NCBI RefSeq assembly: GCF_964188315.1
Contig: NC_135656.1
Coordinates: 71,300,001 to 71,364,000 of the forward strand
Direction of reading: 5' to 3'
Length of the DNA stretch: 64,000 nucleotides
DNA from: Podarcis muralis
Lineage: Eukaryota
Shown: positions 3,476 to 29,792 of the stretch, in pieces
How the letters are laid out: the number at the start of each line of letters is the position of its first letter
Position numbering within the stretch: the first letter of the stretch is position 1
Position numbers and translations under genes: made by a program
The notes under the pieces: model-generated
The model's input: the letters and a program-made list of their open reading frames with translations, nothing else
What the model was told of the DNA's origin: nothing
Databases searched by the model: none

Positions 3476-3504
3476 CTTTTTAATGCATTGGGAACTATGC
3501 AAAT
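3476..3504 (-). promoter_or_regulatory. TAS2R copy 1 proximal promoter: octamer + TATA-like box
   Basis: ATGCAAAT at 3497-3504 (ATTTGCAT on the sense strand), 123 bp above the ATG. Sense-strand ATTAAAAAG at 3476-3484. Confidence 0.65.
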
Positions 3505-4097
3505 GAACTGTGTGTCAAACTACCAATTTCCATAATGCTTTCATCTGGGGTAGTGGTGTTGATACTAACTATATAGAAGGGCTTCCTGTCACACAACTTT
3601 GTATGTATCAGGAATGCTGCTTCAATTTGGTGTATATGTGAATAAGAAAGTTAGCCATAGGCAACCCCTTTGTGGCCCGGATTTTACTGCTCACTTAAAG
3701 AATAACAGGAGCTGGAAATACTGCTGTTGAAACAAGGAATAATCCACCTCTGTAAACCACATTTGGAAGATGTTAGCTGGCTTGCTTACCCTCAGGTCCC
3801 CCTCATTTTGGTTTCCAGGAACTTCACAGCCAATTCTTATATTTGCTCCCAGATCATAAGCAAATTCTCAGGCCCCAAACCAAAAGCTTGTTCAGCCCTT
3901 GTCAGTGTAGTTTACCTTCCTTGTTCCTAGCTGCTCATCTCCTCACACGCTCCCCCTTCTTCATGATAAGATGCACAATGGACGAGGCAAGCTAGAAACC
4001 AGCATGGGACGGTCATAGTAGTAGGATTACCTCAGAGGCCTGTGTTAAAACACTCTTTTACTTTTTTAAGCTTTACCAGAAGCATTTCTACTTATTT

Positions 4098-4441
4098 GGG
4101 ACGCGGGTGGTGCTGTGGGTTAAACCACAGAGCCTAGAGCTTGCCGATCAGAAGGTCGGCGGTTCGAATCCCCGCAACGGGGTGAGCTCCCGTTGATCGG
4201 TCCCTGCTCCTGCCAACCTAGCAGTTCGAAAGCACCTCAAAGTGCAAGTAGATAAATAGGTACTGCTCCGGTGGGAAGGTAAACGGCTTTTCCGTGCGCT
4301 GCTCTGGTTCGCCAGAAGCAGCTTAGTCATGCTGGCCACATGACCCGGAAGCTCCCTCGGCCAATAAAGCGAGATGAGTGCTGCAACCCCAGAGTCGGTC
4401 ACGACTGGACCTAATGGTCAGGGGTCCCTTTACCTTTACCT
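4098..4441 (+). mobile_element. Sauria SINE, full length
   Basis: tRNA-like head with B box (ggttcgaatcc), conserved body and the tail ggggtccctttacctttacct. Confidence 0.9.
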
Positions 4442-5662
4442 ATAGTTGAACTACGGAAGCATAAATTTTGGTGACCAGTTCTCAGCTGACTTACTGAATA
4501 TGCTGAATGCCTATTGATGCTTAAATCAACCTCAACCCCGTAGGACACGCAAAATGTGAAACAAGCTTTTAATACTATCAGGTGCTTTCATTTCTTCTTT
4601 TTAGTTTTCCCCAAAGGGCCTCAATACTTGTCATCCTGAGTAAAGAAATTTACAGTGCTCAAGGATGCTGCCCATGCCAAGATCTTAGACTTATCTAAGT
4701 CAACAGACACAGTCCAACTCAGTTTATTTATTGGCAGGTTTTATCACCCACCATTCACTGAATGTCTACTTGGAAGTTAATCCTATTACGTTATATGGGC
4801 TTATTCTTAGGTGGGCGTACATAGACATCTAGGTAATTGATGTGTTTATCTTTCAGATAACGATAGGCTTTTTTTATTCTTTTGTGCAGGAAGGAGAAAC
4901 CTATAGCCTCCAGATGTTTCTGAGCTACAGATCCCATCAACTAGCTTTGTTCAGGGGTGATGGGAGGTGTAATTCAGCAATATCTGGAGGTTCACCACAC
5001 CTGCTTAAAAAGCGCTTAGGTTTGTTTACAACTATTTACCGAAAGTGAAATGTAAATATGGGTCCCTGATGAAGCACGGTGGTAACTATATCCATTCTTT
5101 ATTTGCATTCCTGTAATTGCCGCTGAGGATTAAGTAGACTTAAGGTGACAGCAGATCATCTATTAACTATGAAAATATTTTTAGGGAAATGTAATGGATA
5201 TAATATCCCTATTTACGATGGATTCATCTATTTCAAAAAAGAGAGCCTTCGATACAATCGAAACCTGGGCTATACAGTGGGTGATACAAAACTGCAGATT
5301 TGACAGCAGATATAACCAGTTATTGCAAGAAAATAGGAAATAAGGCAACAGCAACATATCATCTCCATGTAAAGACCCACCCAGTATCTTTAAAAAGAGG
5401 CATAAGGCAAGAAGTTAGCTTATCACCTAAACTACACTCACCTAAGCTATTTACATTCACCTTGGAAGGTGTATTAAAAGCTGGAGTGGTAAAAAAAAAA
5501 AGGAATCTGTGTTAACAGAAGATATCTAAATTTTCTATGATATGCAGGTGTTGTAATAATAAAAAGTCGACAAGAACTACAAGAAATGCTGGAATAACTG
5601 AACGAAGAATCAAATGAAAAATAAAAATATTTCTTTAGACTCAAAAGCTAAAGTGATCAATA

Positions 5663-5883
5663 CAGTGGTACCTCAGATTAAGAACTTAATTCGTTCTGGA
5701 GGTCCATTCTTAACGTGAAACTGTTCTTAACCTGAGGTACCACTTTAGCTAATGGGGCCTCCCACTGCCGCCGCGCCACCATGATTTCTGTTCTCATCCT
5801 GAAGCAAAGTTCTTAACCTGAGGTACTATTTCTGGGTTAGCGGAGTCTGTAACCTGAAGCGTCTGTAACCCGAGATACCACTG
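5663..5883. mobile_element. Tc1/mariner-type MITE (CAGTGGTACCTC TIRs, TA TSD)
   Basis: TA-CAGTGGTACCTC...GAGATACCACTG-TA. Confidence 0.88.
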
Positions 5884-6134
5884 TATGTGCATATTAGCTG
5901 TGATGTGTTATGAAGAACTGGACACACAAAGAAACATGAAAATTTAAAGAATAGTACAACATGCCACAGGACTCACAATGTTAGGAATATCATTAAAAGA
6001 TAGAAAAACTAATAATTGGGTACAAGAAAGACTGAAAGTTGGGGTTGTAATGGAAAAGGCCGTGAAGCTAAAGTGGGCAGGCCATGTGGCCGGAGACGAT
6101 TCAGGCCAATGGAATAAAGCAGTGTTAGTATGGT

Positions 6135-6818
6135 GACTCTACAGTTTTAAAAGGCCACCTATGTTCTCTAAGAAACCAGAACTATTTATTTTAGGCATAA
6201 TGACATCTGATATTAAAAACAAAATAAGACTGCAGTTCATGTATGCAGTCACCACCGCCAGGAATCTAATAGCCAGAAATTGGAAAAGGGAAACACCACC
6301 AACCAAGACAGAATGGCAAGCTAAACTGGTAGAATATCTAATGTTAGCGAAAAAAATGGAACCAGTGAGAGGAGCCTCAGAAAAGGAGGTAGACAAGGAA
6401 TGGAAAATGGCGAGAGAATATCTCCAAGGATACTGCAATAGTAGAGGCTATCTGACGTTAGAAGAATGAGTAACAACATATGGTATTAATACAAAAAAAC
6501 AATAATGACTAAATTAAATAATGGATATAAGTAGGAAGACGATGTTTGGATCTAATGGTTACAGCAGGAAGAGTATTATGGACTTAATCAGAAGTATTCA
6601 CATTTCTTTTAATTTCTGTTTGTTCCACTGTATATAGGCATGTTAAATTATATGTAGGTAGCTACGATTAATTGAACTGGAACATAGATTTGAGCAGTTT
6701 GTAAACTTAAATGCTACCTTTTTCCTTTATGGGAAATCTTTTGCTATTTGTATTTTCTTTCTGATTATTATTTTCTTTGTTTATAAACTCAATAAAGATT
6801 TTTTTTTTAAAAAAAAAA
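6135..6818 (+). mobile_element. L1/Tx1-type LINE 3' end with poly(A)
   Basis: ORF 6161-6469 (ELFILGI...TARNLIARNWK...PTKTEW) is an ORF2 C-terminus; AATAAA and an A-tail follow at about 6790-6818. Confidence 0.8.
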
Positions 6819-6985
6819 GATCATCTATGTTATGGTTGGACCATCCAAAACTAACAGCACAGCTTATGTGGATGCAGGAAGCAAACAACAGAAAGTGATG
6901 GAGAGAACTTGAAGAGGGGTATATCCAAAGATCAGTGGAGGTGAGGAACAGGTTTAAGGATTAAAATTCTACAAGGCAGGCTTAA

Positions 6986-8176
6986 GCAGTATGTGGACTG
7001 AGAACACCCAGAAGTGCAAGCTGGATTTCGAAGGGGCAGAGGAACCAGAGACCAAATTGCAAACGTGCTGGATTATGGAGAAAGCTAGAGAGTTCCAGAG
7101 AAACATCTACTTTTGCTTCATTGACTATGCAAAAGCATTTGACTGTGTCGACCACAGCAAACTATGGCAAGTTCTTAAAGAAATGGGAGTGCCTGATCAC
7201 CTCATCTGTCTCCTGAGAAATCTCTGTGTGGGACAAAAAGCTACTGGATATGGAATACCGGTAACTGATTGGTTCAAAATTGGGAAAAGAGCACGACAAG
7301 GCTGTATATTGTCTCCCTCCTTATTTAAGTTAAATGCGAAAGGCTGGACTGGATGAATCCCAAGCCGGAATCAAGACTGCCAGAAGAAATATCAACAACC
7401 TCAGATATGCTGATGACACAACCTTGATGGCAGAAAGTGAGGAGGAATTAAATAACCTTTTAATGAGGGTGAAAGAGAAGAGCGCAAAATATGGTCTGAA
7501 GCTCAACATCAAAAAAACAAAGCTCATGGCTACTGGTCCCATCACCTCCTGGCAAATAGAAGGGGAAGAAATGGAGGCAGTGAGAGATTTTACTTTCTTG
7601 GGTTCCATGATCACTGCAGATGGTGACCGCAGTCACGAGATTAAAAGATGCCTGCTTCTTGGGAGAAAAGCAATGACAAACCTAGACAGCATCTTAAAAA
7701 GCAGAGACATCACCTTGCCAACAAAGGTCTGTATAGTAAAAGCTATGGTTTTCCCAGTAGTGATGTATGGAAGTGAGAGCTGGACCATAAAGAAAGCTGA
7801 TCGCCGAAGAATTGATGCCTTTGAATTATGGTGCAGGAGGAGACTCTTGAGAGTCTCATGGACTGCAAGAAGATCAAACTTCTCCATTCTTAAGGAAATC
7901 AGCCTTGAGTGCTCACTGGAAGGACAGATCCTGAAGCTGAGGCTCCAATATTTTCGCCACCTCATGAGAAGAGATGACACCCTGGAAGAGACCCTGATGT
8001 TGGGAAAGATTGAGGGCACAAGGAGAAGGGGATGACAGAGGACGAGATGGTTGGACAGTGTTCTCGAAGCTACCAACACGAGTCTGACCAAACTGTGGGA
8101 GGCAGTGGAAGACAGAAGTGCCTGGCGTGCTCTGGTCCATGGGGTCACGAAGAGTCAGACACGACTAAACAACAAC
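6986..8176 (+). mobile_element. BovB (RTE) LINE, 5'-truncated
   Basis: FCFIDYAKAFDCVDH, RQGCILSP and NNLRYADDTTLMAESEEEL, with the tail gacacgactaaacaacaac. Confidence 0.95.
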
Positions 8177-8489
8177 ATATTCAAAGATGGATGTGAAATG
8201 CTGTAGAAGAAGAAAGAAAGATGGCAGTATCTTTGTCTAGATGCCTGAAAAGTCTAATTCTTGCATTACCTCTGTGCTTCAGTTGTCCCTTGGGATCTGG
8301 ATAACAACTTTCATATAAGGCAGGAGAAAATGCACACTAATGTTGAAGAAAAAATGTGTGATTTGAGCACACAGAAAATGCAATTTTACACAATGTTGAG
8401 GGAGAGACATTTGGTGTACAATGAAGGAGAAACAATATGCAAAGAACTGATCATACAGAAACATCAGAGCAGGGGGAAAAACCGTATGC

Positions 8490-8875
8490 ATGTTTACTCA
8501 GAAGCAAGCCCTACTGTGGTCATTTTCTTCTGGGTAAGCAGGCATAGGATTGGGCATTGTTCACTTATCTTGATACAACAGAAGATGCAGAGCTAGGCAG
8601 AGCCAAAATGGGGAGAATATGACAGGCTGCAAATAGAAAATGCTGTAAATTCTCCAAGTGGTTCTTAAACACTTTATACAGTAGTTAATGAAAACTGCAG
8701 TCAGTAAAACTGTCTCGCATATATTGGGTTTGGTTTGGGACAGAAGATGTTAACTAGTAGTGAGGCTCCCATGTTTAGCCCATTCAGTGATTATAACTAT
8801 AAAGTCATTGCAAAAGAGCCCGCAAAGGACCAAGTCAGCTGCAGTTCTCCAAAAGCCAACATTGCAAACATTGCC
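8490..8875 (-). pseudogene. TAS2R: Decayed, 3'-truncated TAS2R pseudogene (TM1 to about TM4)
   Basis: The minus ORF 8750-8974 ends in AADLVLCGLFCNDFIVIITEWAKHGSLTTS, matching TM1/ICL1 of the intact copies. Plus-strand 8545-8620 (gggcattgttcacttatcttgatacaacagaagatgcagagctaggcag) aligns with the TM3 DNA of copy 1 with indels and stops. Boundaries approximate. Confidence 0.8.
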
Positions 8876-9286
8876 CAAGGAAATACATGGGTTGAACCCT
8901 CTTCTTTTCAGCCACTGGTTCTGGCTGTCCCTTTCATGAACCCCCCCACACACACACACACAAAAGATAAGCACTATTAGTCATAGTGGTTAAGTGTCAT
9001 GCCACGGGGCTGAAGCTCAGCTGTGAGGACATCACCACCCCAGAAATCTCATCCTCACAAGGTGTTTTTGCCTTTGCTGAAAATAGGGATGAGCTTGAAG
9101 CTCCCATGAAATGCAAGGAGGCACTTGGTTATGCTCCTAGGCCCCAGGCAATAATCAGTGGTAGTAGTAGTATAAGCATCGCTTGCGTTAGACGTAACAC
9201 TAGGTTTTTAGAAGATCAGCAACAACAACAAACTACAAGCCTCTGGTTGAGAAGTGCTGAAACCAGGACTGGCTTATACCATAGAG

Positions 9287-9525
9287 CAGGCATTTCCAAC
9301 TCCCAAGAGACTGTGATCTACTCCCAGTACAAAAAAAACTGGCAGTGATCTACCCGTCATTGGAGGGAGGAGGAGCGTGCGTGGGGTGGGCGGGTGAATT
9401 CCCCAGAGTTGTTAAGCTTTTTTTGGAGGGAAATGTCCCCCCCCCCCAATGACTTTTTGTACACGATAAGGATCCCGCGATCTACCAGGATCAGCCGGGG
9501 ATCTATCACTGGTTGGACATCCCTG
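9287..9525. mobile_element. hAT-type MITE with 8-bp TSD CCATAGAG
   Basis: TSD at 9279-9286 and 9526-9533; CAGG...CCTG termini. Confidence 0.88.
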
Positions 9526-9598
9526 CCATAGAGGTTTTTCCTGACTTACCACAGGGACACCCTCATTCCTCAGAACAAGTTCCAGCTGAACTGAGGTA

Positions 9599-9830
9599 CA
9601 GCGGTACCTCAGGTTACATACGCTTCAGGTTACATACGCTTCAGGTTACAGACTCAGCTAACCCAGAAATAGTGCTTCAGGTTAAGAACTTTGCTTCAGG
9701 ATGAGAACAGAAATCGGGCTCCGGCGGCGCGGTGGCAGCAGGAGGCCCCATTAGCTAAAGGTTAAGAACAGTTTCAGGTTAAGTACGGACCTCTGGAACG
9801 AATTAAGTACTTAAACCTGAGGTACCACTG
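9599..9830. mobile_element. Tc1/mariner-type MITE (same family as 5663)
   Basis: TIRs and TA TSD; opposite orientation to the copy at 5663. Confidence 0.88.
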
Positions 9831-10774
9831 TACTTGGTAACAATAAACTTACGAGTTGTAGAGTTGGAAGGGACCCAGAGGGTTGTTTAATCCAACCCCC
9901 TGCAATGCAGGATTGATTGCTGCTTTAATTGATATGTTGTATCTCTCAAATTAGGATAGGTTTTTCTTTCATCAGTATCTTTAAAGACATAAATTTGTTT
10001 GCATCTGTTTACAGAAAGGAAAATGCAAAGATGTGTGCCAGAGATAGCAGAGTGGTAAATATATCCCTTCTGTATTTGCATCCCTGTGATTGCTGGTGAG
10101 GATGAAACAGGCTTGAGACAGTGCCTTTGTTTAGATTTATGAAACTTCTAATTCTTTCATTACCTCTCTGCTTCAGTTGCCCATTGGGATGTAGATAACA
10201 ACAGAACAGAAGGAAATGCAGACAATTCGTTTGACCAATATATACATGTCTATACTTTTGAATAGCTGCTCTTTTTTGTATAAGTGAATATGGAAGGTCA
10301 ATATCCAGTCAAATGGCTCTGAACTAAAGCTCATACATCAGTCATAAGGATAATCCCACTGCCCTGCAGATGAATAGATAGGATTGCTAATTTCTTTCTA
10401 GTCATTCATATTACTTACTCATTCCGACTAGGCATAAACATTGCTAGCAAGGTACTCAAAAGGGCTGTTGAGATGCCTACAGCAACAAATCGTTCATTTG
10501 AAGTTACCCACCAGCTCCTAGTTTTTCTGCTGAAATAGACATCTCAGTAGCCCTTCTGTGTTTTGTGCAGTGCAATTTTGGGGAAGATAGATGTGGAGTT
10601 GGAAGGTTCTCGTGGTGACTTTGCTGCCACTTATTTGGTTGATTCCCAGAGATGCCCAAAGCCTATGCAGAAAGCTGCCCTGTCATCAACATGGCCACTT
10701 TACTGGGGAACTCCGCCCACCCCTAACTGGTAAGGTTCAATAGTTCTGCCTTATTAATTGTAGAGTTGGAATGT

Positions 10775-11600: not shown

Positions 11601-11622
11601 AAGGCCTGAGACCTGTGGGTAT

Positions 11623-13719: not shown

Positions 13720-14619
13720 CTATGTTTTTGGAAGCATCTGCATAGCTGCCTGCTTGAGCTTGGGATTAGCCAACAGCAGGATGGCACCCTGTGCAGGGGA
13801 GTACATTAGGATCACTGTTAGACACACCGAATAAACAGAGGTGATTCTTTCAATATTTTGAAGTACAATTATGGAATGTGCCACGTAAAAAAAAATGTAA
13901 ACGATCAGGAGGGAGAGCACTGTCCCAGCTGCCCTGATATGAGCTTTTGTTTGGAGGCTTGGAAGACTGGCTCCTTTACCTGTCATCTTGCAGACATGTG
14001 TGTAGAGTGAGGCTACAATCACAATGGAGCACAATAAAACCACAAGAAGGGGACAGCCAGAAGCAGTCATTAAAAAAAAGGCTTGCAGAGAACGAGAAAG
14101 TTGGGTTGCTTTCTTTCCTTGAGTCACATTTGAAGTGTTGGTTGCTATGTTGCTCTGGAGCTGAAAAGAAATATGTGGGATTGTAATCAAAGAAACAAAA
14201 ACCGAAAAGACTTGGGATCCCACAAGAAGCCAGGGCAGCAGCTGCGATATCCTCAGCTTGCACCAAAGGAAGAGGGTGTGGGTGCTGTTCACTATCTTGA
14301 TGCAATAGAAGACGCAGAGCCAGGCAGTGAAACAAAATCGGGTGTATGAGACAAAGGTTGCAAAGAAGTAGAATGTTTGAAACACTAAGCCGTCGCTTGA
14401 GTTGGTTATTAAGAAATTAGTAATGACTGCAATCTCACAGGCAGTGGCAAAGATATTGGACGTACCCAGAGAGAGAAGTAGTTGTTCACAAGTTGCAAGA
14501 CTCTTGCATTGAGCCCATTCAGTGACCATCACTGCAACTATAAAACCGTTGGAGATGAGCCCACCTAGAACCCAGTCACTTGCAGCCACCAGAAATGCAA
14601 TGATTTTGGAAGAAGGCAT
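13720..14619 (-). CDS. TAS2R: Intronless bitter taste receptor (TAS2R family), copy 2, 299 aa
   Basis: Intact ORF with the same motif set (GLISNGF, AWLCVFYCIKI, FLWCKLRI, SLYTH, HIRA, NPKLKQAA). Confidence 0.93.
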   Translation of the reverse strand: MPSSKIIAFLVAASDWVLGGLISNGFIVAVMVTEWAQCKSLATCEQLLLSLGTSNIFATACEIAVITNFLITNSSDGLVFQTFYFFATFVSYTRFCFTAWLCVFYCIKIVNSTHTLFLWCKLRISQLLPWLLVGSQVFSVFVSLITIPHISFQLQSNIATNTSNVTQGKKATQLSRSLQAFFLMTASGCPLLVVLLCSIVIVASLYTHVCKMTGKGASLPSLQTKAHIRAAGTVLSLLIVYIFFYVAHSIIVLQNIERITSVYSVCLTVILMYSPAQGAILLLANPKLKQAAMQMLPKT

Positions 14620-14715
14620 ATTTCCAGACCCTTGCAGACTGCTGTACAGGTGGACTGACCAAAGTTCTTGAGTTCATGCAGCGCACAGGTGTGATGGTAG
14701 CAGATCAGCAGCATA

Positions 14716-14769
14716 CTTTTTAATCCATTGGGAACTATGCAAATGAACTGAGCATCAAACTATGTAAAT
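14716..14769 (-). promoter_or_regulatory. TAS2R copy 2 proximal promoter: octamer pair + TATA-like box
   Basis: ATGCAAAT at 14737-14744 and ATGTAAAT at 14762-14769, with a TATA-like element just below. Confidence 0.65.
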
Positions 14770-15826
14770 CAATGTGCTACCAAGTTCCACAAGGCTCTTA
14801 TTTGGGAGAGTGGTGTTGATACAGACTGTATAGAAGGGCTTCCTGTCACACAACCTTTTGTGAATCAGGGATGTTGCTCCATTTTGGGAGTTATATGAAT
14901 AAGAAAGCTTGCCACTGGCAGCCACTGCAGTGGCCCAGATTTTTCTCTGCAGGAAAAAAGTGTTAGGAGTTGGGGAAATGGCCCTTGAAGCAAGGAAGGA
15001 ACATCAAGAAATGGCGTTGGAAGATACTCGTCGTCTTGCTTACACTCAGACCCTCTTAGTTTTGGTTTTCATGACTTTTTAGCCTATTATCCCACTTCAT
15101 AAAAACTATTATTTCCACCACAGGAAGCTATCTCATGCCCCAAGCTTAAAAACTTCATAAAGTCTTCACCGGTACAGTTTACTATTTTTTGGTGGCTGCT
15201 TATTTCTCTGACCCCAATCCAGCTGTTGACATCAATCTGTCATTTTTTTTTCTTTATGAACAGATACACAATTGAATGACGCAGTATCAAACTTCAGCAA
15301 GTGACAGCAATGGAGTTAGCTCAGAGATCATTTTTCCAGTGCACATGCTGCAATTGCTGCTCTGCTTAAATCAGCTCCAGCTCTCCACTGACACACAGTA
15401 TACTCAAAATGTAGAGCCAGTTTTTAATACTGTCAAATGCTTCTGTTTCTTCTATTTAGTGTAGCCAAAAGACTTCATTGCCTGTGCCATTCAAAGTAAT
15501 GTTTTTGATTGTGCTCAAGGGTGTTGTTGCCATGCTAAACCTCTGAACTTTTTAAGTATATATTTGCATTAAGGGACATAAACAGCCCAAGCTATACATC
15601 CTTGAAATTTAATCATACTATATTCAATGGGCTTACTCTATGTACAGTGTGCATATGATTACAGCCTTAAATGATAGGTTTATCTGTCAAATAATTATAG
15701 GTTTCTGTTTCCTTAGTGTATTAAAAGCACACAGATTTGTTCATTGCTGTTTTCCAGGATGGAAAAAGATTTAGTGTCTTTTACTAAGTCTAGTGGTAAC
15801 TATTTCTCTTTTCTTGCATCATTATA

Positions 15827-16068: not shown

Positions 16069-16756
16069 TAATTGCAGCTGAGGATCAAATAGGCATAGGA
16101 CAGAATCTTTTATTAGAGTCATGAAACATCTAATTCTTGCATTGCTTCTTTGCTTCATTTGCCCCTTGGGGTGTGGATAACAACCTACCTAAAGGGTGGG
16201 CGGGGGAGCAAAAAATGCAAACTAGCATGTAATAAATGTGTTGTGCTTAGAACACACGGGAAATGCAATAGCGCCATGTTGTCGTGAGACCTTGTTGTAC
16301 ATAAATCAAACTATTCAAAGTAGATAAGAGCACAGTATGATCAGAAATGTCTGACTCCAATAAATAACAACCAACCACATGTTCCTACAAGTCAACAGAG
16401 AGCACATAAAAGTGATAGCCTACCCATTCTTTCCACCTGCAGCATGCTGAGTCTGTTTCTTTCCACGTGAAGGCTCCATTTAGCTATTCGGATGAATAGC
16501 CATTGATAGACCTGTCCTTCATGGTGCATCTAATCCTCTCCTAAGATCCAGGGGGGACAGCAGGTGGCTTTGAGGATGGAGCAGGTCATGGCAAGACTTC
16601 AGAGGGAGATGAGGCTGTGATGGAGACAGGTCTTAGTGTCCTTACAAAGAAGGAGATGGGACTGAAGGGAGTACATAGAAGCTATATATGAGAGTCTTTG
16701 CTCATCATAATCCACAGGAACTTCTAAAATATAATTTTGTGTTGTTCCCTTTGCAG

Positions 16757-18758: not shown

Positions 18759-19545
18759 TTAAGTCTCTGTTTTTGGAAACATCCTGGCAGCTGCCTGCTT
18801 GAGTTTGGGATTAACCAACATACCTGGGTGTTTTTTTTACCCTGTCCAATTGTAAGCAAGGTCTCTGTCAGGCAAAAAGAGATAGCATCAGGAGGGAGAG
18901 CACTTTTCCAGCTGCCTTGATGTGAGCTACCATTTGGGGACTCTGAAAATTCAATCCTTTACCTCTCATCTTGCAGAAATGTCTAAAGCGTGAGGCTACA
19001 GCCATGATGGAGCAAAGGAAAGCCGCAAGAAAGGGACAGCCAGAACCAGTATGGGTGGGAAAGGCCTGAAAAATTCAGTCTGTCTTTCCTTGCGTCACAT
19101 TTGTTACATTGTCTGGTATTTTGCTGTGGATTATTTTATAAATATTCTGCACTGCAAACAGGGGGGGGGGGGGACGGGGGACAGTGAGATGAGATCCCAC
19201 AAGAAGCCTGATATCCTCAGCTTGCACCAAAGGAAGAGGGAATGGGTGCTGTTCACTATCTTGATGCAATATAAGATGCAGAGCCAGGCTGCGAGCCAGA
19301 ATTGAGAGAATGTGACAAAGGTTTTAAAAACAGAGCATTTGCGGTATTAAGTACTACCTAGTGAAAAATGGAACCATAAAACCTGTATAGCAGACATTGG
19401 ACATACCCAATGCCGTAGTTGTTCGCTGACGGCAAGGTTCCTGCATTCAACCCATTCAGTGATGATCACTGCAACTATAAAGCCATTGGAGAAGGCCAAG
19501 TCCATTACATCCACCAGAAATGCAATAATCTGGGGGAGAAGGCAT
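18759..19545 (-). pseudogene. TAS2R: TAS2R pseudogene, copy 3
   Basis: Aligns end to end with copies 2/4/5 but is 787 nt. It has a +1 C after codon 4, a 12-nt loss in TM1, a frameshift at the TM2 start, a poly-G/C tract at about 19160, and a deletion of about 57 nt in TM7. Confidence 0.9.
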
Positions 19546-19648
19546 ATCTCTGGATTCTTGCAGACTGCTAGACTTTCACTAGCATTGAGATGGGGAGTCC
19601 AAGTGAGATAGCAGGTCTATAGTATACTTTCTCAATGGGTTGGGAACT

Positions 19649-19681
19649 ATGCAAATGAACTATGCATCAAACTATGTAAAT
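19649..19681 (-). promoter_or_regulatory. TAS2R pseudogene copy 3 retained octamer pair
   Basis: ATGCAAAT at 19649-19656 and ATGTAAAT at 19674-19681. Confidence 0.55.
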
Positions 19682-20309
19682 TCATGGGACTCTTGGCCTT
19701 CCCATTTCCATGATGCTTCTACACAGTATAGTGGTGTTGATGACAAACTATATTGAATGGCTTTGTATAAATTGAATTGGTGCTTCATCTTGGTGGTTAT
19801 ATGGAACAAGAAATTTTGCCCAAGAGAACCCTGTTGGTGGTCTAGATTTTACTGCTCAGGTAAAGCATAGGAGGAACTGGAAATACTGCTGTTGAAACAT
19901 GGAAGGACCACCCCTGGTGGTTACAATATGGGGTATCATAGGGCACTATTCTATCCCCATTGCTGGGAGCAGCCATTAGGACTTTGGGGGCCAGGTGCGA
20001 TTTGTATGCTGATCCTCAGCTCTCTTTCTCCAGAAGTTCTGAATCAGGAGAAGCCATGTGGGCCCTGGGCTGATTCCTTGATACAGACTTGGGATGGATG
20101 AGGGGGAATAAGCTTGTTTGTATCCTGGCAAGATGGCTTTGATCTGTGGAACTGTCATGGTTACAGATGCCACATAATATCTGTTCAGTAGCTGTAAGAA
20201 ATTGATCTTTTAATGTGGTAGCACCTAAACTGGAACTCCCTGCCTATTGATATCAGACATATGCCTTTGCTGTGCTCTTTCTGGTGCCTGTGCAGACATA
20301 CAGAAGTTA

Positions 20310-20495: not shown

Positions 20496-20562
20496 TACAT
20501 GTGTTTTTCTCTTTTTAGCTACTGTTGATTTTAATTATATTCTGACTGATTTTAAATACATA

Positions 20563-22130: not shown

Positions 22131-22131
22131 T

Positions 22132-22187
<56 letters not shown>
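22131..22187. repeat. (TTTC)n microsatellite
   Basis: Seen directly. Confidence 0.95.
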
Positions 22188-22634: not shown

Positions 22635-22745
22635 ATAATTTATACCCCCGCCCATCTGGCTGGGTTTTCCCAGCCACTCTGGGCAGCTTCCAACAAAACC
22701 TTAAGATACAATAATTCATAAAATATTAAAAACTTCCCTAAACAT
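22635..22745 (-). mobile_element. L2-type 3' tail
   Basis: tttatacccc...cccagccactctgggc...aaaaacttccctaaaca. The same family occurs at about 47300-47520. Confidence 0.65.
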
Positions 22746-23842
22746 TTTCCCCTATAGAAAAAATGTATGTACAATTATTCTGAGCTGCAAGGGTGTGTTG
22801 GTGTGGTGACTGTAAAAAGTAAGATCAGAGGACATGAAATGTGTAAAACTTTGGACAGTGATAATTACATGGTTAACAGTGGTAATTTCCAAAACAATTT
22901 TTTATGAAGCAGATATCATGGCACCGTTAAGTACAAGGAATGGACAAGGAATTATTTCACTCAGTTCACTCCACAAATGATAGCACTGAAACTCTTGATA
23001 TATTGTGATTCAATGGTTTCATGTCGCAGTGTCCCTTTGAAGTTCCTTTGCTGTAGGATGGCAACTTTAAGGTTATTTACAGAGTGTCATAAAAGCATTC
23101 TGCCAAAGGCTTTTTGAATATTGCCATCTCTGATGCCAGACTTCTGTCCATTTCTTATTTTGCATATAGGCTGGTGTGTTTGTCCTGTGTAGAATGCAGA
23201 AAGGAGTTTCTGATGGCGGATATCACGTAAGAAGATTGCAGATATCACATTGGAAGATGAGGAGGTGAACAAACTCCTGATGTTGTGAACAGCATTCTAA
23301 GGCTGTGTAATAGTATTGCCAGAGTGAATTTGTGGACAGAGATGGCATCTGCGTCTGCCACAGGGGCTGCTCCCTGGTATACAGATCCCTGGCATAGGTA
23401 TGTTGTTTCTTGGGAAGAGCTGTTCAAGAGCAGGAGGTGCCTGTAAACATCACGTTCCTTTGTTTTTGTTTTGCTGCTTTCTAATCCAGGTCTCTCCTAT
23501 GGCAATTCTTAGATGCCTTGACCAATGAGCCTGAAGGGATTTTAATGTTTCATTTTAAGAAAGGAAGTCGCTGACTTAGGGGGAGGAAGCAAGGCTGCTT
23601 GTGACTGGGGCAAGGTGGGGCAGGAGTCTTTAACCACTCATCACCCCCCATCCCAATCAGAACCACAATGGGAGGAAATCTGCTGTTGGCATCAATAGGC
23701 CCTTTCTTCCCATGGCAAATGGCAGGCATGATAGGAGGGGTCAATTCCAGTTTGTGTGCTGGAGAAAACATGCACACTCTACTCCTGACCAGGCTTGGGG
23801 CCCCTGAGCTAGCTCTTCACAAAAGGCAACACCTAAGAATGG

Positions 23843-24739
23843 TTAAGGCTTTCTTCTTGGAAGCATCCTGGCAGCTGCCTGCTTCAGCTTGGGATTCACC
23901 AACACCAGGAGGGCAGCCTGCACAGGGGAGTACATTAGTATCATTGTTATACACACTGAAATGCCAACTATATCTTTGTTAATACAGCCAGTTATAAATA
24001 AGATCTTTGCCACGTAAAAAGAAATGGAAAGCACCAGCAGGAGGAGGACTGTCCCAGCTGCCTTCGTGTGAGCATCTGTTTGAAGGCCCCTAACACTGGA
24101 TTCTTTCCCAGTCAGTTTGTAGACGTGTCTGTAGAGTGAGGCTACAACCATGATTGAGCAAGGAAAAACTATCAGGAATGGGCAGCTAGCACCAGTAATC
24201 AAAAAGAAGATTTTGAAATTAGTAGCAAAATCAACCTCTGTCTGGTCTTGCGTCATGTTTGTAATGCTTCCCTGGGGTTTAATATACACACTCTGCAGTG
24301 CAAAGAAGGAAGCAAGCAAGGAGATGGCTTGAGATCCCCCAAGAAGCCAAGGTATTATCCGTGATATCCTCAGCTTGCACCAAAGAAAAAGGGAGCAGTT
24401 GTTCTTAACAATCTTGAGATAATAGAAGAGGCAGAGCCAGGCAGTAAGCCAGAATCGGGAGAATGTGAGAAAGGTTCCAATGAAGTAGCATGTTTGTAAT
24501 ATTAAGGGGCTGCTAATGTCAGAGATTAAGTAGTACTTAATTAAATATGGAGACAGAACACCCGAGAAGCCGATATTGGACATACCTAGAGACAGAAGAA
24601 GTTGTTCTCTAGCATCAAGTTTCCTGCTTTTAGCCCACTCAGTGACTATCACTGCAACAATAAAGCCATTGGAGATGAGCCCACCAATAGCCAGGACAGC
24701 TAGAGACGCCAGAAAGGCAATAAATTGAGGAGAAGGCAT
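23843..24739 (-). CDS. TAS2R: Intronless bitter taste receptor (TAS2R family), copy 4, 298 aa
   Basis: Intact ORF with GLISNGF, FWLTAWLCLFYYLKI, SLYRH, HTKA and NPKLKQAA. Confidence 0.93.
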   Translation of the reverse strand: MPSPQFIAFLASLAVLAIGGLISNGFIVAVIVTEWAKSRKLDAREQLLLSLGMSNIGFSGVLSPYLIKYYLISDISSPLILQTCYFIGTFLTFSRFWLTAWLCLFYYLKIVKNNCSLFLWCKLRISRIIPWLLGGSQAISLLASFFALQSVYIKPQGSITNMTQDQTEVDFATNFKIFFLITGASCPFLIVFPCSIMVVASLYRHVYKLTGKESSVRGLQTDAHTKAAGTVLLLLVLSISFYVAKILFITGCINKDIVGISVCITMILMYSPVQAALLVLVNPKLKQAAARMLPRRKP

Positions 24740-24863
24740 CTCTCCGTATCCTTGCAGATTACTGTACCAGGTGGCCTTTCACTGATCCAAAGTTGCCCCA
24801 CTGAGATGCAGTGTGCAAGTGAGACAGAACATCTGCAGCATCCTTATGAATGACTGGGGAACT

Positions 24864-24871
24864 ATGCAAAT
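24864..24871 (-). promoter_or_regulatory. TAS2R copy 4 proximal octamer
   Basis: ATGCAAAT in the same GGGAACTATGCAAATGAACT context, 125 bp above the ATG. Confidence 0.65.
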
Positions 24872-26459
24872 GAACTGTGAACCAAATTATAAATTAATGA
24901 GACTCTCCGGCTGCTCATTTCCATAATGCCTCTATCTGGCATAGTGGTGTGGACAGAAACTGTATCAGAGGGCTGCCTGCCACTCCACTTTGTATAAATT
25001 GGGGGGTGGGGGCAGCTTCTCCATTTTGCCAGGCCCGTGAATAAGAAAGCTTGCCACAGGCAACCACTTTGCAGTGGCCCAGAGTTTATGTAAAGAATAG
25101 GAGGAGCTGGAAATTCCAGCTGGCTTGTTTGTCCTCAGACCCTCCTGCTTCTGGTTCCCAGGCCTCTGCAGCCTTTTCTTTTATTTGATCCCATATTATA
25201 GGCAAATGCTTCTTCCTCAACAGCATGCCCCAAAGTAAAATCTATCTGCAGTTATTTCCAATGAAGTTTTCCTTTCCTTTGCTGCTAATTTCTTTAACCG
25301 CAGTACAGTATTTATTCTTTTAAAAACAGATCAATGCAAGCTCCAATTGCAGTGTGTAACAACCACAATAGCAGACTTAGCTCATAGATCCAGCTGCACT
25401 CATTTTTCTATTGCACATTCTGCACTGCTGCACATTCTCCACTCCAGCTCTGGATGAACCCAGTATATTTATAATGTAGAACCTATTTTTAACACTACCC
25501 AGTACTTTTGTTTCTTCTGCCTAGTTTTTCCAAAAGACCTCACTGTGTGTGTGATTCAGTTACCATTTTGACTGCACTGTTGCCATGCCAAATATCTAAA
25601 GTGTTGGATCTTTAAACAGAGGGACATGTCCAGCCCAATCCTACTATATTCAGTGGCCTTTCTCTAAGGTTAGTGCACCTGCGATTGCATTCCTGATTGG
25701 TAGGTTTACTTGCAAATCATGATAGGATTGTGGGTTTTTTAGTGTCTTAAAAAGCACATATTTGCTTGCTGGTCCTGTTTTCCAGAGCTGGAAATGCAAA
25801 GATGTGTATTTAATTTAGCACATTGGTAACTGGATCTGTTTGCCTATTTGATCCTCAGCTGTAATTATAGCAATGCAAATAGCAAAGGACAGCATCTTTT
25901 ATTAGGGTCTGTAAAATGTCTGAGCTGTGGATCTCAACCTTCATAAAGGGCAGAGAGAGGAAGAGAAATGCCCCTTAACACATTAAGAGAAATGTGGTGC
26001 TTTGAGTGATCAAAGTTGGTTCCAGTAATATTTTCAGGCAGGAGCTGACAATATGGCGGGGTAAGACAGCACTGCCTCTCAGGGTCCCTCTAGGTTGCTG
26101 CAAGAGAGGGAAGCAAGATAGCAGAGATCTCAGTGTAGTCCTCCCGGTGGCTTGGGTGCACCAACCTCCTCACCTGAATTGCCTTACTCATCTCTTCTCC
26201 CTCTCAGTAATAAGCCTGGACCTCGGAGTTGGGAAGTGAGGAAAGCAAGACTGCCCAATCCCACCAACAGCTGCTGTCTGCAGGACATTAGGTTACCTCT
26301 GCATTAACCTATTTCACTGTTAACAGGGATGGGGAACCTGTGGCCATTCAGATATTGTTGGATCACAACTCCCATCATCCCTCACTAGGAGGACCAATGG
26401 TCAGGGGTGATGGGAATTGTAGTTCAAAAACAGCTGGAGACCCAGGTTCAGGAAACTCT

Positions 26460-26553
26460 GATCAACCCCCTGCCATGCAGGAATCTTTCACCCAATGAGG
26501 GGCTTGAACCCACGATTCTGAGATTGAGCCTTATGCTCTTCTGACTGAGCTAT
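26460..26553 (-). mobile_element. tRNA-Lys-derived SINE with CR1-like tail (partial)
   Basis: The reverse strand reads tagctcagtcagaagagcataaggctcaatctcagaatcgtgggttcaagcccc. Same family as 32383 and 61968. Confidence 0.7.
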
Positions 26554-28721
26554 CTCTAAGGAAATTTATGGACCTATTAAATGAACAGGTGTAAGAAAAC
26601 AGGACCTACGTTCTGTCCTGTTCACAATGTGGGCAGGCAGGCATGATACAAAGGCAAAACAACCCCAAGACAGGCAAATGGAATTCAAATCCTATGGAGA
26701 TGTATGATAAAAGTGACTATCAAATTTAATAATAATAATAATAATAATATCATCATCATCTTAGGGAGAAAGTAACTTACAGAGATGATACCTTCGATTT
26801 TTGAAACATCTAATTCTGACATTGCCTCTGTGCATCAATTGCCCCTCAAGATCAAGCAATAAGCTTCATAAAGGATGGGGAGGGGGGAAGCAAACTAACG
26901 TAATAAACACAGCACGTTGTGTTTTGGGCACACAGGAAACGCTATCATACACAATATTGTGGGGAGACATAGATGCACAGAGGCTGATCCATCCCAAGAA
27001 TATAAGTGTGCCGTACAATCAAAAATTTCTGACTCCATCAAGTAGCAGCCAAGCAGCTGTTCCTAGCAGCCACAGACAGTGCACAAAAGTGATAGCCTAC
27101 CCATTCTGTCTAGTTAATAGCCAATGGTAGACTTGTCCTTCACTGAAACATTAATCCCCTTCTGAGATCCAGAGGAAGAGCAGGTGGCTCTGAGGAAGGA
27201 GCAGGTCATGGTAGGAACTCAGAGGGAGGTGAAGCTGTGATGGAGACAGACTTTAGTGTCCTTACAAAGAAGAAGATGAGACTGAATGGAGTTCAAGGAA
27301 GGAAGGAAGGGTGGGTGGGTGGGTACGTGGGAGTCTTAACTCATCATAGTCCACAGGAATTGAAAATGTATGAATATGTTGTTTCATAAGGGTGAAAGAA
27401 GGGAGGCAATAAAGTAACAGGTGTTTTTTTTCAGGATCAGAAAATGTTTATTGCCTCCTGACATAAAAGGTACATACTACAAGATATAATTAGGCTTTTA
27501 TTTTACATCATGTAAAAACAAATAAGAATGGTGAAGAGACTCAAGGCTAGCACATTTATGCATGTTGTCCTGGAGTTGCCAGTACAAATATACGTCTGGG
27601 TGTGGGCAATCGTAAAAAAAATAAGGTCAGAGGGAAATAAAAAGTGTAAAACTTCAGCCAGTGATAATTACATAGTTAACAGTGGTAATTTCCAAAACCA
27701 TTTTTTAAATGTGGATATCATGGCACCGTTAAGCACATGGAATGTGCGAGTTCTTTGTGTCAGTTCAGTTCACAAATGATATCGGTGAAAACTCCTGATG
27801 TATTGTAATTCAGTGGTTTCATGTCGCCATGTCTCTTTTGAAGTTCCTTTGCTGCAGGATAGCTATTTTCAGGTGTCCTAGGACCTAGAACGTTTCAGTG
27901 TTCCGCCATGTCCTTTTGAATATTGAGATTTCTGACATCAGATTTTTGACCATTTTGTATTTTGTGGCTCATTCCTCCTCTATAGAAAGCAAAAGGGCAG
28001 TGCTGGCAGATGATGGCAGACACCATGTTGGAAGGTGAGCAGGTGAACAATCCCCTGAGGTTTGGGATGGCATCATTCATCCTGAAACAGTTTTCCCAGA
28101 GTAAGTTCCCCATCTCCATAGCCCTGTCATGGGCATGTTGTTCCTTGGGAAGAGCTGTTTTGGATCAGGAGATGCATGTAAGGATGTATAAGTCAACAGC
28201 CAAGGCGTGTGAGAGGGAAGTGTCATTCTCCAGACTTGGGTGTCGATAACTGATGAAATGTGTGAGTGATTTCATTTGGGGGCTGTAAGTGGCATCTGCT
28301 TTGTTTTGCTGTATTAGATGAGCCTTGTACTTTGAGGAATGCCTGGTGTCAGTTGTTAAGCAGTGAGTCCTTATCCCGTGACCCTGAAGAGATGTAGCAG
28401 GCTTCATTTTAAGAAAGTAGCTGCCCTGCGGAGGGGGTGGGGAGAGAAGGCTGGTTGTGACTGTGGCAAGGAGGGCAAGGGACTTTAACCATTAATCCTT
28501 CCTTTTCCCGATCAGAATCGCAGTAGCAGGATAGCACTGACTGGAACCAAGAGGGGCTTTCCCAGCATTGCAAATAGCAGCCATGATAGGAGCAGGACAA
28601 TGCTGATTGAAAACATGAGAGCAAACAAAGTGTTACAGTCCTTTCTCCACTTCACACCCTACGCTTGACCAGGCTTGGGGCCCCTGAGCCAGCTCTTTTT
28701 ACAAAATGCAACATCTAAGAA

Positions 28722-29636
28722 TTATGAAGGCTTTGCTCTTGGAAGCATCCTGGCAGCTGCCTGCTTGAGCTTAGGATTCACCGACACCAGGATGGCAGCC
28801 TGCACAGGGGAATACGATATTATAACTGTTATACACACTGAAGTAGCAAATATGCTTTTTCCAGCTTGTCCAGTTATAAACAAGGTCTCTGCCACATAAA
28901 AAAATATGGAAAGAATCAGGAGGAAGAGCACTGTTCCAGCTGCCTTGACGTGGGCTTCTGTTTGAGGGCTCCTAAATTTGGATTCTTTACCTGTCATCTG
29001 GCAGACATGCCTACAGAGCGAGGTCACAACCAGGATGGAGCAAAGGAAAACTATAAGAAAGGGACAGACAGTATGACCAATTAGAAGCCAGCCTTCAAGA
29101 AAGCAGTCAAGCTTATTCTCTGTCTTCCCTTGTGTCATGTTTGCATTGTTGACTGTTGCATTGCTCATGAGAGAATTGCATTGCTCATTTTGAATTGCAA
29201 TGAAGGACGCAAGAAACGTGATGACAAGAGAGCCCCCAAGAAGCCAGGGCACCAGGCGCGATATCCTCAGCTTGCACCACAGGAAGAGGCAGTGTGTGCT
29301 GTTAACTATCTTGACGCAATAGAAGACGCAGAGCCAGGCAATGACCCAGAGTCGGGAGAATAGGCCAAAGGCTAAAAAGTAGAAATATACGCCAAATATT
29401 ACGCCGTCTCTGGTTTCAGGCTTTAACCCGTATCTAATTAAAAATGCAGTCAGAGTAAGTGTGAAGAAGATATTGCACGTACCCATGGATAGAATAAGTT
29501 GCTCCCTAGCAGCGAGGGTCTTGCATTTAGCCCATTCAATGACTATCACTGCAACTACAAAGCCATTGGAGACGAGCCCACCGAGGGCCAAGTCAATTAA
29601 AACCACCAGAAAGGTAATGGTCTGGGAAGAAGGCAT
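28722..29636 (-). CDS. TAS2R: Intronless bitter taste receptor (TAS2R family), copy 5, 304 aa
   Basis: Intact ORF with GLVSNGF, LWVIAWLCVFYCVKI, SLCRH, HVKA and NPKLKQAA. Confidence 0.93.
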   Translation of the reverse strand: MPSSQTITFLVVLIDLALGGLVSNGFVVAVIVIEWAKCKTLAAREQLILSMGTCNIFFTLTLTAFLIRYGLKPETRDGVIFGVYFYFLAFGLFSRLWVIAWLCVFYCVKIVNSTHCLFLWCKLRISRLVPWLLGGSLVITFLASFIAIQNEQCNSLMSNATVNNANMTQGKTENKLDCFLEGWLLIGHTVCPFLIVFLCSILVVTSLCRHVCQMTGKESKFRSPQTEAHVKAAGTVLFLLILSIFFYVAETLFITGQAGKSIFATSVCITVIISYSPVQAAILVSVNPKLKQAAARMLPRAKPS

Positions 29637-29738
29637 CTCTCCGGATCCTTTCAGACTGTTGTACAGGTAAGACTTTCAGCAACCAAAATTGTTGAGCTAA
29701 AGTGGAGAGTGTGAGTGAGTTAGCAGGGCTGCGGCATA

Positions 29739-29792
29739 CTTTTAAATAGGCTGGGGACCATGCAAACGAACCATGTGCTGGACTATGTAAAT
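29739..29792 (-). promoter_or_regulatory. TAS2R copy 5 proximal promoter: TATA-like box, variant octamers
   Basis: Sense-strand TATTTAAAAG at 29739-29748, ATGCAAAC at 29760-29767 and ATGTAAAT at 29785-29792. Confidence 0.55.

What the first reader, a model, noticed from the sequence alone, without database searches (positions are those of the whole stretch)
3476..29792. Conserved octamer + TATA module above the TAS2R genes: candidate direct POU2F3 (Skn-1a) promoter code
Seen: the 20-mer GGGAACTATGCAAATGAACT, containing a perfect octamer, is identical in copies 1, 2, pseudogene 3 and 4 (octamers at 3497, 14737, 19649, 24864). Copy 5 has the variant ATGCAAAC at 29760. The site sits 104-125 bp above each ATG and, except in copy 4 and pseudogene 3 where the box is degraded, just upstream of a TATA-like box. 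A second POU-like site, ATGTAAAT, lies exactly 25 bp further up in copies 2, 3 and 5 (14762, 19674, 29785). The encoded proteins and the surrounding flanks are clearly more diverged than this motif. Known: POU2F3 binds ATGCAAAT and is required for type II (bitter/sweet/umami) taste cells and for tuft/solitary chemosensory cells; its OCA-T coactivators act on octamer DNA. Inference: these reptile TAS2Rs are direct POU2F3 targets through an immunoglobulin-promoter-like octamer/TATA architecture.
Basis: partly seen in the sequence, partly recalled or inferred. Interest (0 to 1): 0.75.

Follow-up and report, generated by a model that had tools for sequence, protein, structure and literature searches.

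The report
Conserved octamer in reptile bitter-receptor promoters
Five tandem bitter-taste receptor (TAS2R) genes of a lacertid lizard each carry a POU-factor "octamer" site about 120 bases above the start codon, and the same site, in the same orientation and place, is found above TAS2R genes of other lizards, a gecko, a turtle and a bird. This suggests, but does not prove, that the taste-cell master regulator POU2F3 controls these receptor genes directly.

Summary
The window holds four intact TAS2R genes and one pseudogene on the minus strand. The 20-mer with a perfect octamer (ATTTGCAT in gene orientation) is exact in four copies. Copy 5 has GTTTGCAT. A second site, ATTTACAT, lies 25 bp further up in copies 2, 3 and 5. 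A TATA-like box follows 12 bp downstream.

This 20-mer is the best conserved non-coding stretch of the duplicated unit, although the paralogues share only 47-57% of their residues (dS about 0.45).

The new result comes from 21 further TAS2R genes in 11 other species. ATTTGCAT is the commonest 8-mer at -260..-60: 18 of 26 genes, 10 of 12 species, 18 sense against 1 antisense, 0.35 expected. It is the only conserved 8-mer shared by two deep TAS2R clades. Outside Lacertoidea the distal site is the perfect one, so the two sites have traded roles while one octamer was kept.

The claim that the octamer stands out from its flanks holds inside the window. It holds only in part across squamates, where the block TATGGAAAT is better conserved.

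I found no published report for TAS2R. A similar Oct site is published for TAS1R4.

The parts
2463..3374 (-). TAS2R copy 1, intact 303-aa ORF
   Evidence: ORF. Pfam PF05296 at E 3.7e-51.
3476..3484 (-). Copy 1 TATA-like box ATTAAAAAG (-110..-102)
   Evidence: An Inr-like CCACATT lies about 30 nt downstream.
3490..3509 (-). Copy 1 conserved 20-mer with the proximal octamer ATTTGCAT (3497-3504). The distal site is deleted in this copy and in its Zootoca orthologue.
3526..3562 (-). Copy 1 upstream conserved blocks TATGGAAAT (3526-3534) and TCAACACCACT (3552-3562)
13720..14619 (-). TAS2R copy 2, intact 299-aa ORF
14716..14769 (-). Copy 2 module: TATA-like ATTAAAAAG (14716-14724), proximal octamer (14737-14744), distal ATTTACAT (14762-14769)
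18768..19545 (-). TAS2R pseudogene (copy 3). The similarity to the intact copies is split over several reading frames.
   Evidence: The tblastn pieces lie in different frames. The ATG is at 19545.
19627..19681 (-). Copy 3 module: degraded box ATTGAGAAAG (19627-19636), proximal octamer (19649-19656), distal ATTTACAT (19674-19681)
23843..24739 (-). TAS2R copy 4, intact 298-aa ORF
24843..24895 (-). Copy 4 module: degraded box ATTCATAAG (24843-24851), proximal octamer (24864-24871), decayed distal remnant (24886-24895)
28722..29636 (-). TAS2R copy 5, intact 304-aa ORF
29739..29792 (-). Copy 5 module: TATA-like ATTTAAAAG (29739-29747), variant proximal octamer GTTTGCAT (29760-29767), distal ATTTACAT (29785-29792)
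   Evidence: The Zootoca orthologue has the same G variant.

Best explanation
The octamer is a selectively maintained core element of the proximal promoter of sauropsid TAS2R genes.

Layout in this lizard:
- Each TAS2R coding exon has a module of about 260 bp upstream.
- The module holds two tandem POU-type sites 25 bp apart. The proximal one is ATTTGCAT and the distal one is ATTTACAT.
- A TATA-like box lies 12 bp below the proximal site.
- An initiator-like CCACATT or TCACTTG lies about 30 nt after the box.
- This predicts a transcription start about 75-80 nt above the ATG in the four intact copies (about 60 nt in the pseudogene). The octamers would then sit near -50 and -75 from that start.

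Proposed mechanism (inferred): a class-2 POU protein binds the octamer and helps assemble the initiation complex on the weak TATA box. In bitter taste, solitary chemosensory and tuft-like cells that protein would be POU2F3. [quoted passage not shown] This would tie receptor expression directly to the factor that specifies the cell type, much as OCA-B with Oct-1 or Oct-2 drives immunoglobulin promoters in B cells.

What is shown: the motif, its fixed position and orientation, and its retention across species and clades. What is inferred: the transcription start, the identity of the factor, and the activating effect.
For: 1. Exact 20-mer in four paralogues that share only 47-57% of residues and have dS 0.37-0.51. 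My estimate from that dS: about 6e-6 chance that any 20-mer of the upstream region stays intact in four copies under neutrality.
2. It is the best conserved non-coding 20-mer of the unit.
3. Among 26 TAS2R genes of 12 species, ATTTGCAT is the most widespread 8-mer at -260..-60: 18 genes, 10 species. It is the only conserved 8-mer shared by the APEH-nested squamate clade (13 of 19 genes) and the TAS2R7/40/41-like clade of turtle, gecko and bird (5 of 6).
4. There are 18 sense and 1 antisense occurrences, against 0.35 expected from the -1500..-300 background.
5. In seven of the eight genes without a perfect octamer, the best site differs by a single base.
6. Site turnover. The distal site is perfect in Varanus, Elgaria, Pogona, Anolis and one Tiliqua gene, while the proximal site is degenerate or absent there. 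In Lacertoidea the proximal site is a perfect octamer or its one-base variant GTTTGCAT, while the distal site has decayed or been lost.
7. Orthologues group together: window against Zootoca promoters are 91-95% identical, paralogues 58-72%. There has been no recent homogenisation.
8. A TATA-like box and an Inr-like motif stand at canonical spacing.
9. Literature. OCA-T binding needs adenine at octamer position 5 (PMC12755459). POU-family motifs are enriched in the accessible chromatin of mouse type II taste cells, and Tas2r promoters are open only in those cells (PMC10239704). A conserved Oct motif upstream of TAS1R4 was proposed as a Skn-1a site (PMC10781636).
Against: - No expression, transcription-start or binding data could be obtained.
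- The octamer is bound equally well by ubiquitous Oct-1 and by other POU proteins, so the motif alone does not name POU2F3.
- In tuft-like lung cancer cells POU2F3/OCA-T1 peaks lie mostly at distal enhancers, not promoters (PMC9534498).
- The mouse scATAC study found no correlation between Pou2f3 gene score and motif accessibility, and suggested a repressor role.
- The single frog gene examined has no octamer within 1.5 kb. Mammals could not be examined.
- Copies 3 and 4 have a degraded TATA-like box although copy 4 is intact.
- The genes are related by descent, so the gene counts are not independent.
- Across squamates the block TATGGAAAT is better conserved than either octamer site.
Confidence: 0.6

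Rival explanations
1. The octamer is a functional promoter element, but the ubiquitous Oct-1 (POU2F1) or another POU protein reads it. It would give basal promoter strength, and cell specificity would come from other blocks such as TATGGAAAT or TCAACACCACT, or from distal enhancers.
For: All class-2 POU proteins bind ATGCAAAT (established knowledge). Other blocks are as well or better conserved within the APEH-nested clade. POU2F3/OCA-T1 act mainly at distal enhancers in the cells studied so far. Mouse type II cell peaks are enriched for generic POU motifs annotated as Pou5f1 and Pit1.
Against: Oct-1 with a TATA box would predict broad expression, which is not what is known for TAS2Rs in mammals (selective accessibility in type II cells). 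The adenine at position 5 that OCA-type coactivators need is retained in every copy. The other blocks are not shared with the second TAS2R clade, whereas the octamer is.
Confidence: 0.22
2. The shared motif is only inherited from the ancestral duplicated unit or spread by gene conversion, and has no function of its own.
For: The whole region from -370 to the stop codon is part of the duplicated unit. Paralogue dS is only about 0.45, so much of the upstream region is still alignable. The promoter as a whole diverges at about the synonymous rate.
Against: The immediate flanks have diverged while the 20-mer is exact in four copies. Orthologous promoters in Zootoca carry the same copy-specific states, so there has been no recent conversion. 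The motif is found at the same place and in the same orientation in a second TAS2R clade with about 30% protein identity, in gecko, turtle and bird, where nothing else is shared. Loss at one site goes with perfection at the other.
Confidence: 0.05
3. The conserved sequence acts at another level. It could be part of the 5' UTR (an RNA element or translational control), an element serving the antisense host gene APEH, or a site for a non-POU factor that overlaps the octamer.
For: The transcription start is unmapped. The sampled squamate genes of this clade lie next to or antisense inside APEH introns where APEH was called. A second TATA-like CTATATAG lies further up, near -205, which would put the octamers inside a transcript.
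Against: The gecko, turtle and bird genes that carry the motif show no called APEH gene in their loci. The conserved core is exactly the 8 bases of the POU site, with a strict orientation. The TATA-like box to Inr-like spacing downstream of the octamer is canonical.
Confidence: 0.08

Closest known systems
Conserved Oct-binding motif upstream of TAS1R4 (Nishihara et al. 2023, Nat Ecol Evol, PMC10781636)
   Same: It is a taste-receptor gene with ATGCAAAT conserved upstream of the ORF across very distant vertebrates, including lizards.
   Different: It belongs to a different receptor family (class C TAS1R, a single orthologous gene). That paper reports no such site for the other novel TAS1Rs and does not treat TAS2Rs. 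Here the motif is family-wide across many paralogues and two TAS2R clades, sits next to a TATA-like box, and shows turnover between two tandem sites.
Immunoglobulin V-gene and histone H2B octamer/TATA promoters (Oct-1/Oct-2 with OCA-B)
   Same: A perfect octamer lies a few tens of bp upstream of a TATA box. The orientation ATTTGCAT on the sense strand is as in V-kappa and H2B (from my own knowledge). The position-5 adenine allows an OCA-type coactivator to dock.
   Different: The gene family and cell type differ. The TATA-like box is non-canonical (ATTAAAAAG). The transcription start is not mapped, and no heptamer partner element was seen. The factor would be POU2F3 with OCA-T, not Oct-1/2 with OCA-B.
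POU2F3/OCA-T1/OCA-T2 target sites in tuft cells and tuft-like small cell lung cancer
   Same: The same DNA motif, with the adenine at position 5 (PMC12755459). The same cell lineage logic applies: chemosensory cells that express taste signalling genes.
   Different: The described sites are mostly distal enhancers in intergenic or intronic DNA (PMC9534498). Here the site is promoter-proximal. No TAS2R target is described in the papers I could read.
Family-wide conserved promoters of other chemoreceptor gene families (for example mouse V1R promoters; O/E and homeodomain sites of odorant receptor promoters)
   Same: A short promoter is duplicated along with a single-exon receptor gene, and motif islands are retained while the coding sequence diversifies.
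   Different: The motifs and factors differ. No POU octamer is known to me in those families.

Membership tests
TAS2R bitter taste receptor genes | Intronless ORF of about 300 aa matching Pfam PF05296 over its full length | tested here: met
   Four ORFs at E 1e-46 to 1e-51, covering profile positions 1-301 of 303. The closest named relatives are squamate TAS2Rs.
Octamer/TATA promoter class (Ig V, H2B type) | Perfect octamer ATGCAAAT/ATTTGCAT just upstream of a TATA box | tested here: met
   The octamer lies 12 bp above ATTAAAAAG or ATTTAAAAG in copies 1, 2 and 5. The box is degraded in copies 3 and 4.
Octamer/TATA promoter class (Ig V, H2B type) | Octamer within about 100 bp upstream of a mapped transcription start | tested here: inconclusive
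   No RNA data. An Inr-like YYANWYY motif 28-31 nt after the box predicts a start at -80..-74 of the ATG. This is inference only.
Octamer/TATA promoter class (Ig V, H2B type) | Transcription depends on the octamer and on a POU2 factor | not testable with these tools
   Needs reporter, EMSA or CUT&RUN experiments.
OCA-type coactivator-competent octamer | Adenine at position 5 of ATGCAAAT | tested here: met
   Present in all five proximal sites, including the variant ATGCAAAC, and in the distal ATGTAAAT. The requirement is taken from PMC12755459.
Direct POU2F3 target genes | POU2F3 occupancy at the site, and expression restricted to or dependent on POU2F3-positive cells | not testable with these tools
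   No ChIP or expression data for this species.
Evolutionarily constrained cis-element | Retained in position and orientation across lineages whose flanks no longer align | tested here: met
   18 of 26 genes and 10 of 12 species. It is the only conserved 8-mer shared between two deep clades, with 18 sense to 1 antisense and 0.35 expected.
Evolutionarily constrained cis-element | Better conserved than neighbouring sequence | tested here: inconclusive
   Met inside the window (0.92 against 0.82 for the next window, mean 0.58). Across squamates each single site scores 0.60-0.67 against 0.87 for TATGGAAA, because perfection alternates between the two sites.
Vertebrate-wide TAS2R promoter code | Motif present in amphibian, mammalian and fish TAS2R promoters | tested here: inconclusive
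   One frog gene (Ascaphus) lacks it within 1.5 kb. A bat locus was withheld and not pursued. Fish were not sampled.

The most novel reading that the evidence does not exclude
A POU octamer at about -110 to -210 from the ATG is the ancestral, family-wide cis-code of TAS2R genes. It would date at least from the common ancestor of turtles, birds and squamates (from my own knowledge, more than 250 million years ago). It is shared with TAS1R4, so taste receptor genes of both families would be direct terminal targets of the lineage-specifying factor POU2F3 with its OCA-T coactivators. Selection would keep one perfect octamer per promoter while allowing turnover between tandem sites.
Probability: 0.4. 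Interest if true: 0.75.

Novelty: new member of a known kind. Interest (0 to 1): 0.6.

Why it matters
How taste receptor genes are switched on in the right cells is largely unknown. A 2023 mouse study states that little is known about Tas2r regulation (PMC10239704).

POU2F3 is known as the factor without which bitter, sweet and umami cells and tuft cells do not form. The papers I could find describe no direct link between it and the bitter receptor genes.

A short motif held at a fixed position and orientation above TAS2R genes in lizards, a gecko, a turtle and a bird gives a concrete, cheap experiment: wild-type against octamer-mutant promoters, with and without POU2F3 and POU2AF2/3.

It also offers a practical mark for annotating TAS2R promoters and for telling live genes from decaying ones. 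The swap of the perfect site between two tandem positions is a clean natural example of binding-site turnover under stabilising selection.

Tried and rejected
1. Gene conversion as the cause. Rejected: orthologous promoters in Zootoca keep copy-specific states (91-95% between orthologues, 58-72% between paralogues), and the motif occurs in other species and in a second clade.
2. The idea that the whole 260-bp promoter is under strong constraint. Rejected: its overall divergence is about that of synonymous sites. Only islands are constrained.
3. Window against Zootoca orthologue comparison as a test of constraint. Uninformative: the two species are too close, and fixed-coordinate bins are disturbed by indels.
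5. Mammalian TAS2R promoters. The one bat locus asked for was withheld. I did not try another route and used no human sequence.
6. Frog. One Ascaphus gene shows no octamer or one-mismatch variant within 1.5 kb. A single gene is not conclusive.
7. Literature. The Nature 2022 OCA-T paper is not held.
8. A 5'-UTR intron between the module and the ATG. No consistent donor and acceptor pair is seen in the alignment.
9. Orphan promoter copies. None: there are only five promoter copies in the window, each with a TAS2R coding region.
10. The large protein search, structure prediction and the metagenome scan were not needed. The metagenome scan was also avoided because host contamination there could be human.

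Full report
**What is in the window**

The window holds five tandem TAS2R units on the minus strand. Four ORFs are intact: 2463-3374, 13720-14619, 23843-24739 and 28722-29636. Each matches Pfam TAS2R over its full length. One pseudogene lies at about 18768-19545, and its similarity to the others is split over several frames. The proteins are only 47-57% identical to each other. Pairwise dS is 0.37-0.51 and dN/dS is about 0.7-1.0. The duplicated unit runs from about -370/-460 to the stop codon and ends there sharply. Exactly five promoter copies are present, each attached to a TAS2R coding region.

**Check of the observation**

- The 20-mer is exact at 3490, 14730, 19642 and 24857. None is expected by chance, even with three mismatches allowed.
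- Copy 5 has ATGCAAAC at 29760.
- ATGTAAAT lies exactly 25 bp further from the gene in copies 2, 3 and 5.

Because the genes are on the minus strand, the sites read ATTTGCAT (proximal) and ATTTACAT (distal) in gene orientation. A TATA-like box, ATTAAAAAG or ATTTAAAAG, follows 12 bp after the proximal octamer in copies 1, 2 and 5. It is degraded in copies 3 and 4.

In a five-copy alignment from -480 to +1000, the window -134..-115 is the fourth best conserved 20-mer overall and the best outside the coding region. It scores 0.92, against 0.82 for the next upstream window and 0.58 for the upstream mean. With dS near 0.45, a 20-mer that stays intact in four lineages is very unlikely under neutrality. 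My estimate is about 6e-6 for the whole upstream region.

**Related loci**

The closest named proteins are squamate TAS2Rs. I fetched 11 loci:
- Rhineura, Zootoca, Anolis sagrei, Varanus, Elgaria, Tiliqua and Pogona.
- After two further protein searches: the turtle Emys, the frog Ascaphus, the bird Ammospiza and the gecko Paroedura.

Zootoca carries the four orthologues of copies 5, 4, 2 and 1 (the copy 1 orthologue is 81% identical in protein). The window is therefore from a lacertid.

In Rhineura, Zootoca, Varanus and Tiliqua the fetched TAS2Rs lie antisense within the span of a called APEH gene. In Pogona one does and the other lies just beside APEH. No APEH gene was called in the Anolis and Elgaria loci. 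The turtle, bird and gecko genes belong to another TAS2R clade (TAS2R7/40/41-like, about 30% identity to the first), and no APEH gene was called in their loci.

**The main result**

I counted all 8-mers on the sense strand at -260..-60 of 26 genes from 12 species.
- ATTTGCAT is the most widespread 8-mer: 18 genes, 10 species.
- It is the only conserved 8-mer shared between the two clades: 13 of 19 genes in one and 5 of 6 in the other.
- In that window it occurs 18 times in sense and once in antisense. The background at -1500..-300 of the same genes predicts 0.35.
- Positions run from -104 to -213.
- Seven of the remaining eight genes have a one-base variant at the homologous place: GTTTGCAT, TTTTGCAT, ATTTACAT, ATTTGCAC or ATTTGTAT. 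Only the frog gene has nothing within 1.5 kb.

The genes are related, so these counts are not independent trials. Retention across lineages whose flanks no longer align is itself the evidence for constraint.

**Two sites and their turnover**

The upstream 260 bp of the APEH-cluster clade can be aligned across all the squamates sampled. The site table shows the following.
- In Varanus, Elgaria, both Pogona genes, both Anolis genes and one Tiliqua gene, the distal site is the perfect octamer (one Anolis gene has an extra T). The proximal site there is degenerate: ATTAGCAC, AATAGCAT, ATTAACAT or GTTACCAT.
- In the three Tiliqua genes the proximal unit is absent.
- In Lacertoidea (the window, Zootoca, Rhineura) the proximal site is perfect or GTTTGCAT. 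The distal site has decayed to ATTTACAT, decayed further in copy 4, or been lost in copy 1 and Rhineura.
- The turtle has a single octamer, followed by ATGAATGCAGTTCC and then a TATA-like TTAGAAAAAG.

My reading is inference. The distal octamer is ancestral. The proximal unit arose by a tandem duplication of about 25 bp after skinks branched off. The two sites then traded roles, with one perfect octamer kept per promoter. This pattern argues for stabilising selection on octamer function.

**Gene conversion**

Promoters of the window and of Zootoca are 91-95% identical between orthologues and 58-72% between paralogues. Copy-specific states are shared by orthologues: the distal deletion in copy 1, the G variant in copy 5, and the decayed distal site and box in copy 4. 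There has been no recent homogenisation. Conversion cannot account for the motif in other species or in the other clade.

- The promoter as a whole diverges about as fast as synonymous sites (identity 0.51-0.72 for dS 0.36-0.98). Only islands are constrained.
- In a non-redundant squamate alignment the best block is TATGGAAA(T) at 0.87. TATCAACA (0.70) and several blocks of the putative 5' UTR (0.67-0.68) come next. The distal octamer scores 0.67, and the best window over the proximal site scores about 0.60.
- The octamer is therefore one element of a larger conserved promoter, although it is the only one that reaches the second clade.

**Transcription start**

An initiator-like motif (CCACATT, TCACACC, TCACTTG or TCACTCA) lies 28-31 nt after the first T of the TATA-like box in all five copies. 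This predicts a start at about -80..-74 of the ATG (-60 in the pseudogene). The proximal octamer would then lie near -50 and the distal near -75. This geometry fits an octamer/TATA promoter, but it is inferred.

**Who binds**

The motif is the canonical site of class-2 POU proteins. OCA-T1 and OCA-T2 need an adenine at position 5 (PMC12755459), and it is present in all copies. [quoted passage not shown] The authors state that Tas2r regulation is little understood (PMC10239704). A conserved ATGCAAAT upstream of TAS1R4, with two Oct-like motifs, was reported from sharks to lizards and attributed tentatively to Skn-1a/POU2F3 (PMC10781636).

Several points count against a simple POU2F3 reading.
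- Oct-1 binds the same site.
- POU2F3/OCA-T1 peaks are mostly distal in tuft-like cancer cells (PMC9534498).
- The mouse study suggested that Pou2f3 might even act as a repressor.

**Novelty**

None found a report of an octamer in TAS2R promoters. The TAS1R4 precedent, and the long-known octamer/TATA promoters of immunoglobulin and H2B genes, make this a new member of a known kind.

**Restrictions observed**

- The N run at 31588-31720 was left alone.
- A bat locus came back withheld and was not sought by other means.
- No human sequence was used.

Noticed in passing
window 3526-3534, 24917-24925 (TATGGAAAT); variants at 14783-14791 and 29815-29823; same block in L001, L002, L004-L007: The block TTATGGAAAT, about 20-35 bp upstream of the distal octamer position, is the best conserved 8-mer of the squamate APEH-cluster TAS2R promoters (0.87 against 0.67 for the distal octamer). 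The factor that binds it is unknown. It was not found in the second TAS2R clade.
   Followed up: partly
window 3552-3562, 14809-14819, 19730-19740, 24943-24953, 29841-29851: The block (GTA)TCAACACCACT is invariant in four of the five window copies and recognisable in Rhineura, Elgaria and Varanus. Its reverse complement contains a forkhead-like TGTTGAT core. This is unexplained.
   Followed up: partly
window about 3400-3450 and the homologous places of the other copies; L001-L007: The putative 5' UTR holds blocks conserved across squamates (TTCCATCTCAGCTCAACAACTTTGG and ACCTGTACAGCAG). They are about as well conserved as the octamer. Their function is unknown.
   Followed up: no
In Varanus an MST1-like gene (PAN/Kringle/Trypsin) lies alongside. 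This looks like an old nested arrangement.
   Followed up: partly
window 8603-8860 (-) and 30487-30563 (-): Short TAS2R-like coding fragments (34-43% identity over 63-91 aa, and two pieces of 10-18 aa). Neither has a recognisable promoter module. They are probably remains of further copies.
   Followed up: partly
window 7334-8035 (+): An ORF with a partial reverse transcriptase domain (PF00078, E 1.4e-10), probably a decayed retroelement between TAS2R copies 1 and 2.
   Followed up: no
window CDSs of copies 1, 2, 4 and 5: Pairwise dN/dS among the paralogues is 0.65-1.05 (NG86). This fits relaxed or diversifying selection on the receptors, in contrast with the frozen octamer.
   Followed up: partly
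L010 (Ammospiza) 9700-10000 and 16180-16478: The two bird paralogues differ at the octamer (ATTTGCAT against ATTTGTAT). In the bird the octamer lies upstream of the block ATGTCATTAG, whereas in turtle and gecko the related block ATGTCATCAG lies upstream of the octamer. This is either a rearranged order or an independent origin.
   Followed up: no
L011 (Paroedura) 9700-10000: One gecko gene has, besides the sense ATTTGCAT at -114, two antisense perfect octamers at -196 and -295.
   Followed up: no
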